Assembly (NCBI GenBank): GCA_013265495.1
Contig: MU057781.1
Coordinates: 1,240,001-1,304,000, forward strand
From: Vicugna vicugna
Lineage: Eukaryota
DNA: 64,000 bases
Direction: 5' to 3'
The notes under the pieces are model-generated. The model saw nothing but the letters and a program-made list of their open reading frames with translations, did no database searches and was not told the DNA's origin. This document shows positions 57,150 through 64,000 of this stretch, piece after piece (the first letter of the stretch is position 1; each line of letters opens with the position of its first letter). Made by a program: the position numbers and the translations under genes.

Positions 57150-60100
57150 AGGAGAGCAGCTTTAATTCTGCTCCATGAGCCGCGGATGCTAAGTACACGA
57201 TGGGTCGGGTACTGGGTGTCCAGCCTCTCGGGCCGAGCTGCACACAGCCTGGAGGCGCCACCTCCATCCGGCACAGACAGCTCCCACCTCAGGCTGTCAG
57301 ACTCCCCAGGAAACGGCCGGAAAGTGAGCTGCCCCGAGGATCCCTAAAGTGTCCATAGAGGGGGCGAGTCCAGCTTGAGACCCAGCAGCCCGCCGGAGGC
57401 TGTTCCCACCGCCACTGCTGCGTCTTCAGTGAGCTCCTGCACGGGGAGGTGGGGCCAGACATGCGTCCAGGGAAAGGAAGGAGTGCCCGCATCTCCCTGA
57501 GCTGACCCCCCATCCACCATCCAACCCTTGATCCCAGCATCGTCCCCTGGCCATTCCAGTCTTCACACGAGCAGCCTGCAGGTTCCCGAGGTCTAAAGGC
57601 GCAGAGAGAAACTGGCTCGTCTCCACACACGTGTCCTGGGCCTGGGGACCAGGACCTCCAGCCTCCAGCCTGGGTGGGGCAGCAGCTGGCTCTCTGCCCG
57701 AGGTTCCTGTTGGGACAAGGTGGGCCCATGCTGCAAGCCCCAGGCTGCCCCTGAGCGGCTGTCCCGGCCACACACAACCCCCAACACCCCAGCAGAAGCT
57801 GCCGGTCACCTCTGCCTCAGAAGTGACTTTCCATCAGAGGGAAGCCGCATAAAGTGCTGGGGGCTGCAGAGAGGAGGTCAGGGCTGCTGCCCTGATGGCC
57901 AAGCCCCGCCTGCGCTGGGAAGACCTCTGTGGCCGCGAGTCCTGAGCTCTGCATGTGCCAGAAACTAGCCTCTTCAGGAGGTAGGTGGAGACTCAGCGCA
58001 GCGAGGGACCGGGAGCCGCAGTCTGCTAGACACTTGTCTTACGGCTGTGAAATAAGTCAAGCCAAACACGTTTCAGGAGTGAGTTCTCGGTGCCAGTGGG
58101 AGGCCTGTGCTTCACGAATACCTTGTTCAGAAGGTGAGTCTTCAGTGTGCTAGTAGATTGTAAAGGGCGAGAGGTGCACTGAAGCTGTCTCCCGTGGTCA
58201 GCTGCAGATTCCAGAAAGCAGAGGCTCCATTTGCTGATGGACGACAGCTCGGGGCCCACGATGCTATTTCCACACGGGGCTCGAGGCAGAAGGCAGCCAG
58301 GGGCACACCTGGCCACAGCCACCTGAGGCCCAGCAACAAAGGGAGGGTGCAGTGTCCACGACACCCAGGACGCAACCCGGTCCACAGGGGTCCCTGTGGG
58401 CCCTCTGAGCTGCGGCTGTCACCGCAGGAGGCAGAAGGCCTGAGGCTCCCAGCAGCGCCAGCCTCTGAAGGCCCAGGGCGGCCTCGGTGGCCGCTTTCCC
58501 CAGCCTGGCTCTGCCGCTAACACGGGGGCCGGTGAAGCAGCTGACAGCTGCGGCCTCAGTCTCCCCACCTCGCAGGCGCAGCCCTGTGCTGAGTACAGAG
58601 CTCGACACTGTGGGGCAGCGTGAGGACCGCTGGGCCCACATCCCCTCCGCAGGCAGCTCAGAGGCCTGGGGGCGGGTCGTCCAAGCCCAAGGAGGGGCTG
58701 GCGGGGCAGCTGTGAGGAGGGCTGGGCACCCCGACCACTCACAAAGCCCGAGGCCCAGTTTCTCTTCCCGAGAGACGCCCCCCTACCCAAACTAACACTG
58801 GGATCCAGGGGGCCAGCTGCCCCCAGGTCCAGGCCCCCAAATGCAAGGTCAGGATGGTGGTAGTCAGACAGGCCTGTCTGCCTGAAGTCCCCTCTGGGGG
58901 ACCCCCGAAGCACACAGGCCCTCTGTGCACCCCACTCAGACCCCAGGGCCCCAAAACCCTCAAGGCCCCCCATGCATCCCCCTGGACCCCTGGTGAGTCT
59001 GGTCTTGGTGAGCCTTTGGGGCCTGTGGGCCGCAGCCCCGGGCCCACAGGGCAGCACTGGGGCCTGGGCGGGGGGTGCTCCTCCAGGCCACCCCTCCCTG
59101 TCTCTCTGCACCCGCACACACCTCCTGCAAGTTCTCCCAGAAGCCACCACTGGTCCCGGCCCCCACCTGCTCTGAGGCCAGGGCAGGTCACAGCCTCTAG
59201 GGGAGAGGGCGCAGGGTCAGACAGGAGACTGTGCACAGGGCAGAGGGACAGCCCCCGGCACGGCCTCTCCTCCGTGCCCTGCTGCTGCTGCGGTACAGGG
59301 CCCCGTGCCAGGCAGCTCACGCCCGTCTTTCTGTCATCTCCGGGCTGGGAGCCCCTGCCGGCAGCAAGGGGCTGCCCTGTGCTCACCTGTGCCCCTGCCC
59401 TGGAGTCTGCGAAGGGACCTGTAGGTGGGCACGGGTCCGTGGGGACCACCCAGCCTGGGGGAGTCTGAGCAGAATGCCCCCCAGGTCAGGGTGGGCCTTC
59501 CCAACTCCCCCAAACCCCACTTGCCCAGGACCACCCACTGGGCCCCCAGGGAGCTCCATGAGCCCTCCAGCCCCTGAGGGAGCAGTGCCAGGACTCCGGG
59601 GCCGGGCTTGGGGCGGGAGGGTCTCCACCCAGCCTTGATGCCCAGTCTCTGGGCAACTGGAAAGTCACTTCACCCCTTGGGGTTTCGTGTCCCTCGTCAG
59701 AAGTTCAGGACCCATCACAGCAGCCCACAGAAGGGCAACGGGAAAGTCAGGAGGGTCAGGGACATGGAGCGTCAGGAATACTGGGTGGGATGAGGGACAG
59801 GAGGGCTGGGAATGCCCCACCGAGAGGTCCCGCTGGCTGGGCCTTGGCCCCCTCCCCCCCCCACTGTGGGCCCTTCCCTCCACCTGCTGCCTCTTCTTGA
59901 CGCCCTGTCACTGGTCTCTGCCACCCAGGCTGGGGGCTGGGACCCTGAACCGGGCAGGGGTCTGCGGGGGCTCTTTCTGCATGGCTGAGGCCGTCCACAC
60001 TGGCAGGAGGACCCTGCTGACTCACGCTGGCACCGACCCGTGTGTTCACCTCGGTGTGGCCGTATTTGGATTTGAGAACATTTTAATACGAGGACTGTGA

Positions 60101-60299
60101 AAACGTCTCCAGAATCAATTTCCTTGTTCGTGTGTCTGTTGTCGGAGCCCTAGATGGACGGGATTTCCTCTGAGAGTGAAACAAAAACACCAGGCCTCCT
60201 CCTGCGTCCTCTCGGGGACGTGCTTTAATGTGAGGTGCCCGACTCTGCTGGAAGCAAAGGCAAAACCTTCGGTTGTCTCTTTAAATCGTCTCTGCATTG

Positions 60300-60530
60300 T
60301 GACGGGCGGCAGGCTGGCAGCGGGCTGGCTGGGACGAACCATTCCGGCCCTGCCGCAGGGAGCCGGCCACCGCGCCGCACCATCAGCGCCTCCCCCATCC
60401 CCATGGTTACGGCTCCTGCTTCCGACCATCCCTCGTCCCTGACCGTCGCCGCCCGCGGGAGCAGGCGCAGCGGCCGCTGGCAGTCCTCACGCAGAGTTCG
60501 GGAAGCTGCCTGCTGAGAATTGCACTGAAT
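60300..60530 (+). promoter_or_regulatory. CpG-dense putative promoter/TSS region upstream of the ADGRA1 5' exons
   Basis: Dense CpG (ccaccgcgccgcacc, cgtcgccgcccgcgggagcaggcgcagcggccgc) immediately 5' of the first relic exon. The TSS is not determined. Confidence 0.45.
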
Positions 60531-60570
60531 GTCGGCTGCTCCTGGCTCTGACTCATCCTCCGGGGTGCAG

Positions 60571-60744
60571 AGCCCCGGCCGGCGCTGGGCTGCGGTCCTG
60601 CAATCTGTTGATAACTCCACTTGCAGGCTCCAGAGCGCTGCCTCTGGGATGGAAAACTGCTCCCCAGACCCGAGAACTCACCGCGGCTCGCCGCCAACGG
60701 GAGGCACAGGACCGTGGCCACTCCAGCTGTTTTCACCAAAATAG
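60571..60744 (+). pseudogene. ADGRA1: Relic GAIN-domain exon of ADGRA1, frameshifted and probably 5' UTR; 5' boundary uncertain
   Basis: With a 1-nt deletion at ~60643 it reads VDNSTCRLQSAA/WDGKLLPRPENSPRLAANGRHRTVATPAVFTKI-G, versus recalled ADGRA3 TDDSLYKLQLIAFRNGKLFPATGNSTNLADDGKRRTVVTPVILTKID. Donor G|gtgaga at 60744/60745, phase 1. Confidence 0.8.
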
Positions 60745-61410
60745 GTGAGAAGTTGGGCTGTGCGTCTCCGGGGTTTGTGGCAGGTGGGCCCCAGTGAGGC
60801 AGCGACAGGGCCCGGGGAGGCAAGCTCGGAGCCCACTGGCCGTGGTGTCCACTCCCTGGCCGCTTCCTGGGCGCCAAGCCAGGGAGGCGATTCCTGCTGT
60901 TCCGAGTGCAGATTCTGGATAACTTTGGGTTCCACTGACGGCCCGGAGCCGCCAAAGGACTCAGTCTGTGGGGGGACACAGCCCCTGAGGTCCAGCCACG
61001 TCCAGGCAGCAGAGGCTTCCGTCCGCCCGGGCTGGCTGTTCCCTGGGAGATTAATTCAAGCTCTGTTGACTCCCTTGATTTAAACTGACAGGCAGGCCGT
61101 GCGTGTTTCTTGCAGCCCAAGACTGGGTTGAGTGTCTTGTGCTGGGATGGTGAGCAGAGGTGGGGTTTCAAACACGGGGAAGGAAGGGTCCCCGCGCAGC
61201 GTGTGGCTGTGGGCCAGGTCCCTCCGAGGCCCTGAGGCCCAGGTTGGCCCGGAACCTCTGCTGCCCAGACGGGCCCGAGACAGACACTCCAACAGGCTGG
61301 CTGGTGGAGAGGAGCCAAGGTGGGGGCCAACTTTGGGAGGTGCTGCCGGCCATGCTGGGGGTCCCCTGCGGAGGGGGACCCCCCCACCTGACCCTGCCCT
61401 GTCTTCGCAG

Positions 61411-61600
61411 ATGGGGGAGGCCTCTCCACCCTTGCCCGCCCCACCGCGGTCGCCAGGGGCTCGTCCCCGTGGCCGCTGTTCGGGACCTTGACCTTCCAGA
61501 CGGCCATGGAAGCTGGAGGGGAGAAGGGTGCAACATAATCGGCCGGGCAGGCAGCGCCACCTCCACCCCCTGCTCACACCTCAGTGACTTCTCTGTGCTC
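61411..61600 (+). pseudogene. ADGRA1: Relic GPS exon of ADGRA1 (5' UTR part), frameshifted
   Basis: Branch point ctgac at 61388, pyrimidine tract and cag acceptor at 61408-61410. 61454-61603 reads QGLVPVAAVRDLDLPDGHGSWRGEGCNIIGRAGSATSTPCSHLSDFSVLM, aligning without gaps to recalled ADGRA3 HGADAVAARWDFDLLNGQGGWKSDGCHILYSDENITTIQCYSLSNYAVLM (20/50 identical). The 5' part is in another frame (GGGLSTLARPTAVA). Confidence 0.88.
61506..61538 (+). other. uORF MEAGGEKGAT* in strong Kozak context (gccATGg) within the relic GPS exon
   Basis: atg gaa gct gga ggg gag aag ggt gca aca taa, out of frame with the ATG at 61601. Confidence 0.6.
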
Positions 61601-61603
61601 ATG
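61601..61603 (+). CDS. ADGRA1: Start codon of adhesion G protein-coupled receptor A1 (GPR123); only the ATG is coding in this exon and the rest of the CDS lies beyond the window
   Basis: ctcATG|gtgagt consensus donor directly after the GPS Met. Recalled human ADGRA1 starts MDLKTVL..., which aligns to ADGRA3 AVLM-DLTGS... No DLKTV-like exon was found in 61604-64000, so assignment to ADGRA1 is an inference. Confidence 0.75.
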
Positions 61604-64000
61604 GTGAGTACGTGCGGGGCCGCCCACCCCCGCACGGGCCCCGGGCAGGAGCAGGAACTGCCCCGTGCCAGGCTGCGGGCAGGGGCCGGGGCTCCAGGCT
61701 GCCCTCGCCCAGTGGACCTTCTGCTGGCTGCTCACAGACCATACTAATGAGGTGCCGGCAGGCTGCAGCGTTGACTCACTGGCTTCACGGGAGACGGCGT
61801 CCTGCCCCCACCCCAGGCTGTGACCTGTGAAAGCTTCCTCCGGCCCCGGGCTGGGCGCCTCCCACTCCGGCCCCTAGGCTCCACACGCGGCTGCCCACCG
61901 CAGCCCTGCCGGCCCCTTCCCCCAAAAAGTTGGCTGAACTGATGGCAGGGGATGTGGGTGGGCTTCCGCTGCAGGGACACCGAGCTTGGAGGTCGGGTCT
62001 CTCTCCAGAGAAGGGGGTGCGGCCACCGTGAGCAGCGGGGGGGGCTCGTCCTGAAGGCAGGGGCACTTCCTGTGCTGCCCCCCCGCTTGGATTCCGGAAA
62101 GGCTGACGCCTGTAAATAATGCATTGTGTGTATGCGTGTGTGTGTGAGGGACAGCGGCCAGCGCGTGCGGGGAATGCCGATGGCCGGAGGACAGGGAGGC
62201 CAAGGTGGCCGAGGCTCGGACAACGACGGCGAGTCGCTAGGGCAGATGCGACTCCCCACAAGGAGGGGTTCTGAGTCACCGGTGCATCTTCTTGTTCAAT
62301 TTGAAATGTCAAAACAAGGGAGAAGCTTTTAGCCAGAGGTCAGCGCTGCCCGCAGAGCTGCCCCCCGGCCCGCAGGCTGGGGGCCGGCGCCAGCCTCTCA
62401 GAGGCCTGAGGGTCACGTTCCAGGCACAGCCCAGCTGCACCTCCAGCTCGGTGACCCGAGCCAGCCACCTGTTGCCCCCAGCACGTCCAGGCCTCTGGGG
62501 CAGCCGTGTCCGAGGTTCTGTATCCTCACATTTGGATCCTCGTTTGCAAAATGGGTCCTTGTCACTGGCAGATGAAGGGTGAGCCAGAGGTCAGGGCAGG
62601 GGGCCAGCACGGCCCCTCGGGCCCTGCGCATGTGCGCTGTCCTCCCCAGCATCAGCCCCGTCTCCACCTCCTGTCTGACCCTTTGGCCCTCCCGTGAGAA
62701 CCGCCGGGCGGCCCCGGTTGGGGGCCCTCCTCCTCGAGTCCGTCCCACCCTCTCCCCACCCCGGCCCCCAGCCCACTCCACGCAGGCCCGTCAAGACTGC
62801 GGGAATCAGCTGGGCTACCCTCGCCCGGAGAGTTTGGAATCTCAGCTGTGCGCTGAGCTTTTATTCCTGACAAGTAACACTTACGCTGGAGAGGCTTTCC
62901 GGAAGGACAGAGAATGCCCAGCCTGGCATGTGGGCTGCAGCTCGGCTGCAAGCACTTTCCTGAGCGCGTCTGAGAGTCTGAGGTGTAGACACCTGGGCGG
63001 CTGCCCGTGGCCCTGGGGCACGAGGGGAGGAGAACCAGCAGGGCTGGCTCTGGCCTTGCCACACTCCCACCACCCGCTTGGCCCTGGTGGTGAGCTGCCC
63101 CAACCCCTGTGGTCGGACAAGGCGCCTCCGGCCCCCAGTTGTAAAGACGCCGTGGTCGCCAGCAGGTACGACCAAAGCTGAAACCACGCTGCTCTCTGGG
63201 CGATTTCCTGTGGGACTGCTGGTGCCCCACGCACCTTCTGAACACGCCGCCTGCGTGCCCTCGGCGCCCGCAGGATGGTGAGTTCCCGGCGCCGCCCCGG
63301 GGGGCTGGGGGGCTGCAGCCCCATCTCCAGCGGGTAGATCCCAGGCCTCACACCCCCGCCCACCCGCCCAGCACTGACCACAGCTGCTGTCAGGGGCTGA
63401 CCTGCACGGCTGTTCCCGCGATGGTGCTGCCAGCTGTCAAGTTCAAGCAGGTTCCAAAATGCAAGCGGCTTTGCGCCCCATAGTCTTCTGTGATCCTCAC
63501 TGTCAGCTCAGGGCACAGTGCTCTTCAAGGGAACAAAGTGGCAGGCTCTGGAGTCGGAGGGAAACCCGTCCAAACCCGTGTGCTGTTTCCCTGAGTCGGT
63601 GGTGCCACCACACCTGTCTCGGGAAAGAGGGTGAGCCCACCCGCTCACTCATGCTGGGGCCTCAGTGGCACCATGGCCTCGCTGGTGGCTTTGCTCCGTG
63701 TGGCCCAGGCCCAGGAGGCATGGCCTGACCTCGGTGTGTCAGGGCATCCTTCGCCAGGTCCTGCAGGGCCCGGAACCAGGACAGGGCGCGAGGCCAGGCC
63801 TGCCCCAAAGACAGACATGCACGCTCAGGACGCCGCTGCTCTGCACGGAAGCACCCACGTTCAAAAGGCAAGAGTGGAGTTGAAACCCCGGAGAGACCAG
63901 GGAGGTTGCAGGGCAGAGACTGGAGGCCGGGGCTGTGGGTGGTCTGGGAGGGAGGGAGCCCGCAGGGCGTCGGGGCTCTGTCTGAGCCAGCGGGACCCCA

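What the first reader, a model, noticed from the sequence alone, without database searches (positions are those of the whole stretch)
61574..61603. Translation starts at the last residue of the old tethered agonist, and the relic keeps a canonical HL|S cleavage motif
The frame reads C-S-H-L-S-D-F-S-V-L-M. H-L|S/T is the GPS autoproteolysis motif and S/T-x-F-x-x-L-M is the Stachel (established). The annotated-type start Met is the final Stachel Met, so the receptor would begin just after its own tethered agonist. The relic motif (HLS) is more canonical than the recalled ADGRA3 (SLS), hinting that ancestral ADGRA1 was cleavable (inference).
Basis: partly seen in the sequence, partly recalled or inferred. 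Interest (0 to 1): 0.7.

Follow-up and report, generated by a model that had tools for sequence, protein, structure and literature searches.

The report
Fossil GPS exon heading camelid ADGRA1
The brain receptor gene ADGRA1 of placental mammals begins translation at the last residue of its ancestor's built-in activator peptide, and the dead remains of that peptide survive in the untranslated leader; the "perfect" cleavage motif seen here is a camelid-only accident and does not reflect the ancestral state.

Summary
Window 61571-61603 reads C-S-H-L-S-D-F-S-V-L-M and ends in ATG|gtgagt. The 64 in-frame codons of this exon pass Pfam's GPS threshold.

The locus is ADGRA1 of a camelid, 99.8% identical to an alpaca assembly. 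In platypus, koala, birds, squamates, frogs and fish, the long ADGRA1 reads ...NFAVLM|DLK... at the same exon junction. Placental proteins start M|DLK... So the start codon is Stachel position P7'.

The exon is a fossil:
- Reading the old GAIN frame needs two frame switches.
- No other ectodomain exon survives in the genome.
- The main frame has an upstream stop and no earlier in-frame ATG.
- RNA contigs from three studies splice this exon to a second fossil exon as a leader.

Sheep, orca, gray whale and horse fossils read HF|S. None of 54 functional long ADGRA1 proteins has HL|S/T. The Leu is a camelid TTC-to-CTC change in non-coding sequence. Published work also shows that giving ADGRA3 an HLT triad does not restore autoproteolysis.

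Side finding: a 10-codon uORF (MEAGGExGAT) lies out of frame inside the fossil GPS. It is conserved in six Laurasiatherian species, with almost only third-position changes.

The parts
60000..60500 (+). CpG-rich, promoter-like stretch at the 5' end of the leader. It includes a 22-base block at 60400-60421 that is nearly invariant in six species.
   Evidence: CpG observed/expected is 0.79-0.89 here against 0.1-0.6 around it. RNA contigs begin at 60412, 60432 and 60458. Alignment.
60412..60744 (+). Leader exon A. Its 3' part (about 60571-60744) is the fossil of the second-to-last GAIN exon (SVDNSTCRLQ ... RTVATPAVFTKI), with an internal frame switch.
   Evidence: RNA contigs cover 60412-60744 and join to 61411. 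tblastn to bird and whale proteins. Frames. Platypus ADGRA1 residues 475-511 match at 62% identity, E 0.058.
60440..60442 (+). TGA stop in the main (receptor) reading frame of the spliced leader. No in-frame ATG lies between it and 61601.
60745..61410 (+). Intron between the two fossil exons (GT..AG, 666 bases).
   Evidence: The joint 60744>61411 is seen in contigs of three runs from three studies.
61411..61603 (+). Leader exon B, the fossil of the last GAIN/GPS exon. The acceptor is cag|ATGGGG and the donor is ATG|gtgagt.
   Evidence: Platypus ADGRA1 residues 526-577 match at E 4.5e-10.
61455..61462 (+). Approximate place of a one-base loss. It shifts the old GAIN frame (DGGGLSTLARPTAVARG) into the frame of the GPS and start codon (GLVPVAAVRDLDL...).
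   Evidence: Three-frame translation of the spliced leader compared with bird and platypus proteins.
61496..61600 (+). Pfam GPS match (profile positions 10-45 of 45).
61506..61538 (+). Upstream ORF of 10 codons, MEAGGEKGAT*, in context gccATGG. It lies out of frame within the GHGGWRGEGC codons of the fossil.
61571..61603 (+). C-S-H-L|S-D-F-S-V-L-M: GPS triad plus Stachel positions P1'-P7'.
61601..61603 (+). ATG, the start codon of ADGRA1, equal to Stachel P7' Met. It forms the last three bases of exon B.
61604..61609 (+). Splice donor gtgagt (phase-0 intron). It sits at the same position in the ADGRA2 and ADGRA3 genes of this genome.

Best explanation
Exon B (61411-61603) is the pseudogenised last GAIN/GPS exon of an ancestral long ADGRA1 (LRR-Ig-HBD-GAIN-7TM). 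In placental mammals the ectodomain was lost. The last two GAIN exons survived because they are still transcribed and spliced as the 5' leader of the short, 7TM-only receptor.

The first in-frame AUG of that transcript is the Met that used to be Stachel position P7'. It sits as the last codon before a phase-0 intron shared by ADGRA1, ADGRA2 and ADGRA3. The protein therefore starts M|DLR..., and positions P1'-P6' (SDFSVL) are untranslated.

The HL|S look of the relic arose in the camelid lineage by a single F-to-L (TTC>CTC) change. This happened after the sequence stopped coding, so it says nothing about ancestral cleavage.

Shown: homology, fossil status, splicing of exon A to exon B, the position of the start codon, and the derived state of the Leu.

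Inferred: that an internal promoter producing the short form predates the loss, and that the leader is kept for translational control (see the uORF).
For: - GPS identity: Pfam GPS at 27.8 bits, above the 22.5 threshold.
- Locus identity: ADGRA1 7TM exons lie downstream. The window is 99.83% identical to an alpaca assembly, where the annotated gene starts at this ATG.
- Start at P7': 54 long non-placental ADGRA1 proteins read ..F.VLM|D[LFQ]K.. where about 35 placental proteins begin MDL[KR].
- Fossil status: two frame switches are needed to read the old frame. The main frame has a TGA at 60440-60442 and no in-frame ATG before 61601. A whole-genome search with platypus ADGRA1 residues 1-592 finds only these two exons on this 1.54-Mb contig, while the ADGRA2 and ADGRA3 loci show full exon series.
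- Transcription: RNA contigs from three studies join 60744 to 61411.
- Derived Leu: sheep, orca, gray whale and horse read CSHFS; jackal, felid and Myotis copies are further decayed; all keep ATG|gtgagt.
- Moderate constraint: identity to five other Laurasiatherian species is 0.76 in exon B and 0.72-0.74 in exon A, against 0.61 and 0.42 in the flanking introns.
- Default initiator: vertebrate long forms have no Met for 100-250 residues before P7'.
Against: - The exon B to exon 2 junction was not seen directly in reads. It rests on the alpaca gene model and on orthologous proteins.
- One RNA contig (X4) instead joins 61603 to an alternative exon at window-equivalent 64141. That exon ends the ORF after about 66 codons.
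- The RNA runs are from reproductive tissue of a close relative (95-99% alike), not from brain of this species.
- Four out-of-frame upstream AUGs precede a start codon in a mediocre context (ctcATGG). A shorter brain-specific leader with another start site cannot be excluded.
- Placental sampling at the DNA level covers Laurasiatheria only. The manatee locus did not reach the exon.
Confidence: 0.85

Rival explanations
1. The HL|S triad is an ancestral character kept from a cleavable ADGRA1.
For: - Hemichordate ADGRA-like proteins read CSHL|TNFAILK.
- ADGRA2 and ADGRA3 keep Leu at -1. So a very early ADGRA1, just after the gene duplications, may have been HL|S-like.
Against: - Four other placental fossils (sheep, orca, gray whale, horse) have Phe at -1.
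- Platypus, frogs and squamates read HF|G, birds HF|S, koala HW|G, bowfin HY|S, teleosts HH|N. None of 54 long forms has HL|S/T.
- The triad alone does not confer cleavage in this subfamily (PMC13631675).
Confidence: 0.04
2. The exon is still coding: camelids make a long or N-terminally extended ADGRA1 that contains the Stachel. This could come from an upstream or non-AUG start in the open frame that runs from 60443 to the 7TM.
For: - The main frame is open for 100 codons of exon A plus all of exon B.
- The same frame is open in gray whale and felids. A RefSeq felid model (P0065, 692 aa) annotates such an extension.
Against: - This species has no in-frame AUG after the stop at 60440.
- The frame is broken by stops in sheep, horse, jackal and Myotis.
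- Substitutions in exon B show no third-position excess in this frame: 35, 33 and 26 variable columns at codon positions 1, 2 and 3.
- No signal peptide or upstream ectodomain exons exist.
Confidence: 0.04
3. The match is a chance resemblance in GC-rich non-coding DNA.
For: GC-rich sequence gives long open frames. All six frames here hold ORFs of more than 60 aa.
Against: - The Pfam hit is above the curated cut-off.
- The stretch is 52-67% identical to orthologous exons.
- Exon boundaries are the same in ADGRA1, ADGRA2 and ADGRA3.
- The position in the ADGRA1 gene is syntenic.
Confidence: 0.01

Closest known systems
GPS motif and Stachel (tethered agonist, P1'-P7') of adhesion GPCR GAIN domains (Pfam PF01825; HL|T/S, TxFxxLM)
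   Same: The letters match: W..GC...C.HL|S.F..LM. The Pfam score is above threshold. The position is immediately before the exon that encodes the stalk and TM1.
   Different: Only P7' is translated. Subdomain A and most of subdomain B are missing, the frame is broken twice, and the stretch lies in the mRNA leader.
Long-form ADGRA1 of non-placental vertebrates (platypus, koala, birds, squamates, frogs, fish). Seufert et al. [quoted passage not shown]
   Same: It is the orthologous exon, with the same junction ..VLM|DLK.. and 52-55% residue identity.
   Different: Those genes keep the LRR, Ig, HBD and GAIN exons in frame. Their triads are HF|G, HF|S or HH|N, not HL|S.
CTF-only or N-terminally truncated adhesion GPCR isoforms, and the engineered CTF-delta-TA constructs that begin right after P7' (Dates et al., bioRxiv 10.1101/2022.07.14.500097)
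   Same: Placental ADGRA1 is in effect a natural CTF lacking P1'-P6'.
   Different: It is the only product of the gene in placentals, fixed by loss of the ectodomain rather than by alternative promoter choice. It also keeps P7' as the initiator Met.
ADGRA2 (HL|G) and ADGRA3 (SL|S) of the same genome
   Same: They are paralogous exons that end at the same ..AVLM|gt junction. Each also lacks one element of the canonical triad.
   Different: They are functional coding exons within complete ectodomain gene structures.

Membership tests
GPS motif (Pfam PF01825) | Sequence matches the GPS profile above the curated gathering score | tested here: met
   The window fossil scores 27.8 bits against a 22.5 cut-off, E 3.7e-6. 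For comparison: platypus 45.6, bird 41.0, koala 28.1, orca fossil 18.9, gray whale and felid fossils no hit.
GPS motif (Pfam PF01825) | His at -2, Leu at -1, Ser/Thr at +1 | tested here: met
   The codons are CAC CTC AGT at 61577-61585. The Leu is camelid-specific.
Functional GAIN domain | GPS is translated in frame with GAIN subdomains A and B | tested here: not met
   There are two frame switches, an upstream in-frame stop and no in-frame AUG. No exons for platypus residues 1-474 exist on the contig.
Functional GAIN domain | Autoproteolysis at HL|S | not testable with these tools
   This needs expression and a cleavage blot. It is moot here, since the site is not translated.
Stachel / tethered agonist | Core pattern with S/T at P1', F at P3', L at P6' and M at P7' | tested here: met
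   The stretch reads S-D-F-S-V-L-M. The P1'-P7' definition is from Dates et al..
Stachel / tethered agonist | Forms the N-terminus of the receptor's C-terminal fragment | tested here: not met
   The protein starts at P7'. P1'-P6' lie upstream of the start codon.
ADGRA1 (GPR123) ortholog | The following exons encode the ADGRA1 stalk and 7TM, and the first exon matches annotated ADGRA1 | tested here: met
   Exon 2 reads [21 protein letters not shown], matching the N-terminus of alpaca ADGRA1 (P0105). Further 7TM exons lie at window-equivalent 69.5, 74.2, 83.8 and 84.5 kb.
Conserved peptide uORF | AUG and stop are conserved, and substitutions concentrate at third codon positions | tested here: met
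   In six species, variable columns by codon position are 1, 0 and 9. It is the only such 33-base window in the 1.8-kb alignment.
Conserved peptide uORF | Ribosome occupancy, or an effect on main-ORF translation | not testable with these tools
   This needs ribosome profiling or reporter assays.

The most novel reading that the evidence does not exclude
The fossil GPS exon is kept for a reason, not as junk. Codons of the old GHGGWRGEGC motif, read one base out of frame, now encode a 10-codon upstream ORF (MEAGGExGAT, strong gccATGG context). It appears to be under peptide-level purifying selection across placentals and to gate translation of ADGRA1 from the old P7' Met. The P7' Met may also have served as the initiator of a 7TM-only isoform since before the ectodomain was lost.
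Probability: 0.35. Interest if true: 0.6.

Novelty: new member of a known kind. Interest (0 to 1): 0.42.

Why it matters
ADGRA1 is described as the one adhesion GPCR without a GAIN domain or tethered agonist, and how it is activated is an open question (PMC13178472).

Three results sharpen that question:
- The placental protein begins exactly at P7' of a once-complete Stachel.
- Marsupials and monotremes still have the long form.
- The leader still carries the dead GPS.

Together these date the loss to the placental stem. They define the receptor as a natural 'Stachel-deleted CTF'. They also give concrete ancestral peptides, such as GNFAVLM or SNFAVLM, to test on the receptor.

The result also carries a caution. 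A canonical-looking motif in a fossil can be a lineage-specific accident. In addition, some RefSeq models (felids) translate the fossil as a spurious N-terminal extension.

Tried and rejected
- A regex for 'DLK' after an AG acceptor in 80 kb downstream found nothing useful, because this species has DLR. tblastn with a felid ADGRA1 protein then located exon 2.
- The word-index search with the hemichordate protein region returned only invertebrate ADGRA-like proteins and unrelated adhesion GPCRs.
- The profile search with fossil sequences (A1) added almost no new mammals.
- The look-up of encoding contigs had no record for sloth, rabbit, Dromiciops or thrush proteins. The platypus gene (425 kb) was too long to fetch. 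One call timed out.
- The manatee model starts at a later Met in TM1, so its locus did not reach the fossil exon.
- PF26588 (GAIN_ADGRA3) is not in the genome-search library.
- Lagerstrom et al. 2007 on GPR123 evolution is not held.
- Contigs X1 record 7 and X2 record 9 matched only about 20 bases on each side and were treated as unrelated.
- No structure prediction or complex prediction was run. The stretch is not translated, so a fold would not bear on the question.
- No primate DNA was fetched or searched.

Full report
**What is in the sequence.** Window 61571-61603 reads TGC TCA CAC CTC AGT GAC TTC TCT GTG CTC ATG, which is C-S-H-L-S-D-F-S-V-L-M. A gtgagt donor follows directly. The exon begins at a strong acceptor (ctgtcttcgcag|ATGGGG, 61410/61411). 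Its 64 in-frame codons (window:61412-61603:+) match Pfam GPS at 27.8 bits, above the curated 22.5 cut-off, E 3.7e-6, over 61496-61600. They also match the GPS regions of solved adhesion GPCRs; the best is ADGRE5 at E 1.4e-4.

**Which gene and which animal.** tblastn with a felid ADGRA1 protein places the 7TM exons downstream of the window, at window-equivalent 68.4, 69.5, 74.2, 83.8 and 84.5 kb. Exon 2 (L002:4365-4493) has the acceptor tcctctccag|GAT and reads [26 protein letters not shown]…. This equals the N-terminus of alpaca ADGRA1 after its Met (P0105). In the alpaca assembly, the annotated gene starts at an ATG followed by gtgagtac, with the identical 64 upstream codons. The window is 99.83% identical to that assembly over 5.4 kb. 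The genome is 2.03 Gb. The window is therefore ADGRA1 of an alpaca-like camelid.

**The start codon is Stachel P7'.** A search with a felid ADGRA1 returned 378 relatives; the best 120 were examined.
- About 35 placental proteins of roughly 530-577 aa begin MDLK or MDLR…[10 protein letters not shown].
- Long forms of 800-1220 aa carry I-set, GAIN_ADGRA3 and GPS Pfam hits and read through the same point:
  - platypus …CTHFGNFAVLM|DLKTVLSLPQYPGEF
  - koala …CLHWGHFAVLM|DLK
  - frogs CTHFGNFAVLM|DLK
  - Anolis and Crotalus STHFGNFAVLM|DQK
  - birds STHFSNFAVLM|DFK
  - teleosts CTHHNNFAVLM|DLKK
  - bowfin CTHYSNFAVLM|DLKK
- The tethered agonist is defined in the literature as P1'-P7' (Dates et al.). 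The placental initiator is therefore the old P7' Met.
- The intron directly after this Met is shared with the ADGRA2 gene (…CQHLGNVAVLM|gt) and the ADGRA3 gene (…CYSLSNYAVLM|gt) of this genome.
- Exceptions exist. Murids start MTQW|DLK, and a few models use other first exons.

**It is a fossil, not a coding exon.**
- Translating the spliced leader in three frames shows the old GAIN reading in pieces. QSVDNSTCRLQ is in one frame. DGKLLPRPENSPRLAANGRHRTVATPAVFTKI|DGGGLSTLARPTAVARG is in a second. GLVPVAAVRDLDLPDGHGSW… up to the ATG is in a third.
- Compared with bird and platypus proteins, this needs one frame switch in exon A and a one-base loss near 61459 in exon B.
- The receptor frame has a TGA at 60440-60442 and no in-frame ATG before 61601.
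- A six-frame search of the whole genome with platypus ADGRA1 residues 1-592 finds only two pieces on this 1.54-Mb contig. They are exon B (E 4.5e-10) and exon A (E 0.058, 62% identity). Two other contigs carry full exon series, and their GPS exons read as ADGRA3 (SL|S) and ADGRA2 (HL|G).
- No placental protein among the hits has LRR, Ig or GAIN domains.
- The ectodomain was thus lost on the placental stem, after the split from marsupials.

**It is transcribed and spliced.** RNA contigs from three runs of three studies were laid on the window. They come from a close relative, 95-99% alike. They cover 60412-60744 and 61411-61603 and join them across a 666-base GT..AG intron.
- The contigs start at 60412-60458, at the edge of a CpG-rich stretch.
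- One contig continues from 61603 into an alternative exon at window-equivalent 64141 (acceptor ctcgcag|AGTTTATCG). That exon closes the ORF after about 66 codons.
- The other two contigs stop at 61604.
- The B-to-exon-2 junction itself was therefore not seen in reads. It rests on the alpaca gene model and on orthologs.

**The HL|S triad is derived.** Upstream regions of the annotated start were fetched for sheep, orca, horse, jackal and a Myotis bat.
- All keep the acceptor, the ATG and the gtgagt donor.
- Sheep reads CSHFSNFAVPM, orca CSHFSNFAVLM and horse CSHFSDFKVLM.
- Jackal and felids carry a deletion (…STHFAGLM, …CRSFAGLM).
- Myotis is frameshifted.
- Gray whale reads CSHFSNFTVLM.
- The Laurasiatherian ancestor was thus TGC TCA CAC TTC AGT AAC TTC GCT GTG CTC ATG.
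- The camelid differs by TTC>CTC (F to L), AAC>GAC and GCT>TCT.
- None of the six differences listed for the relative's RNA contigs falls in the motif. A seventh difference was not listed.

Among 54 functional long forms the triads are HH|N (23), HF|G (11), HF|S (7), HL|N (2), and single cases of HL|G, HW|G, HY|S and others. None is HL|S/T. Hemichordate ADGRA-like proteins have CSHL|T. So the family's deep ancestor probably was canonical, but the camelid Leu is a reversal in non-coding DNA. In addition, changing ADGRA3's SLS to HLT does not restore GPS cleavage (PMC13631675). The camelid fossil scores higher on Pfam GPS (27.8 bits) than the orca fossil (18.9), and the whale and felid fossils give no hit. 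This is largely because of such chance states.

**Why the fossil persists.** Against five other Laurasiatherian species, identity is 0.76 in exon B and 0.72-0.74 in exon A. It is 0.61 in the intron between them and 0.42 in the intron after B. Variable columns in exon B are spread evenly over the codon positions of the receptor frame (35, 33, 26), so that frame is not under coding constraint.

One spot differs. A 10-codon uORF at 61506-61538 (gccATGG…TAA) reads MEAGGE[K/Q/N/E]GAT* in all six species. Nine of its ten variable columns are at third positions. It is the only 33-base window in the 1.8-kb alignment with such periodicity. The relative's RNA shows one more synonymous change in it. A tenrec model carries SMEAGEEQ… fused in frame. 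The uORF's ATG is made from the His-Gly codons of the old DGHGGW motif, read out of frame. The leader has three further out-of-frame AUGs at 60529, 60649 and 61411. The main AUG context is ctcATGG.

**Mechanism proposed.**
- Shown: placental ADGRA1 is translated from the old P7' Met of a leader built from two dead GAIN exons.
- Inferred: in vertebrate long forms there is no Met for 100-250 residues before P7'. Any transcript starting inside the last GAIN exons would therefore initiate there. Short MDLK/MDFK isoforms are indeed predicted in a marsupial, a bird, a newt, a lungfish and a killifish. An internal promoter giving a 7TM-only isoform probably predates the loss. Placentals then lost the long form and kept the internal promoter, the splice sites, the start codon and a regulatory uORF.

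**Literature.** ADGRA1 is treated as lacking GAIN and tethered agonist. [quoted passage not shown] A 2026 JBC study aligned GPS and Stachel regions of all vertebrate orthologs, including ADGRA1-3. I found no paper stating that the placental start codon is P7', that the 5' leader holds the GPS fossil, or that it holds a conserved uORF. The library is incomplete, however, and Lagerstrom 2007 is not held. I tested that note and agree with it.

**Caveats.**
- DNA-level placental sampling is Laurasiatherian only.
- RNA evidence is contigs from non-brain tissue of a close relative.
- The uORF signal rests on six species and 33 bases.
- N stretches in the window were left untouched.

Noticed in passing
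window 61506-61538: A 10-codon uORF, MEAGGE[KQNE]GAT*, sits in a strong gccATGG context, out of frame inside the fossil GPS. It is conserved in camelid, sheep, orca, horse, jackal and Myotis, with 9 of 10 variable columns at third codon positions. It is the only window with this pattern in 1.8 kb. A tenrec protein model has SMEAGEEQ fused in frame to the receptor.
   Followed up: partly
L002:141-453 (window-equivalent 64141-64453, just past the window end): An alternative exon (acceptor ctcgcag|AGTTTATCG) is spliced directly after the ATG at 61603 in one RNA contig (run X4). From the ATG it gives an ORF of about 66 codons with no receptor, so it looks like a non-productive or non-coding isoform.
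   Followed up: partly
G000:C9522:10201900-10202320 (L017) and G000:C5155:1048330-1048700 (L018): In this genome the GPS exon on C9522 (ADGRA2-like) reads CQHL|GNVAVLM, with no +1 nucleophile. The one on C5155 (ADGRA3-like) reads CYSL|SNYAVLM, with no His. Both exons end right after ..VLM, like ADGRA1. Each of the three paralogs thus lacks a different element of the triad.
   Followed up: partly
proteins P0160-P0163, P0168, P0174-P0176: Predicted ADGRA1 isoforms of frogs, a flycatcher, eel, sturgeon and other fish keep the LRR, Ig and GAIN-A parts but skip the GPS-encoding exons, joining …NFKC…SLVN…|DLK. These would be long forms without a Stachel.
   Followed up: no
proteins P0065, P0032, P0064, P0066 (felids); P0155 (tenrec): Database models translate the fossil exons as an N-terminal extension of ADGRA1 (for example 692 aa, starting MSAGPGSDS…). 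The same frame is closed by stops in sheep, horse, jackal and Myotis, so these extensions are probably annotation artefacts.
   Followed up: partly
window 60400-60421: The 22-base block CCCATGGTTACGGCTCCTGCTT is nearly invariant in six Laurasiatherian species. It sits at the point where the RNA contigs begin, within a small CpG-rich stretch (60000-60500). It may be a core promoter or start-site element.
   Followed up: no
proteins P0076, P0075 (murid and dipodid rodents): Rodent ADGRA1 starts MTQW|DLK (Arvicanthis) or has …GAEW|DLK (Jaculus) instead of M|DLK. In these lineages the P7' Met codon was replaced, and the start lies three codons upstream.
   Followed up: no
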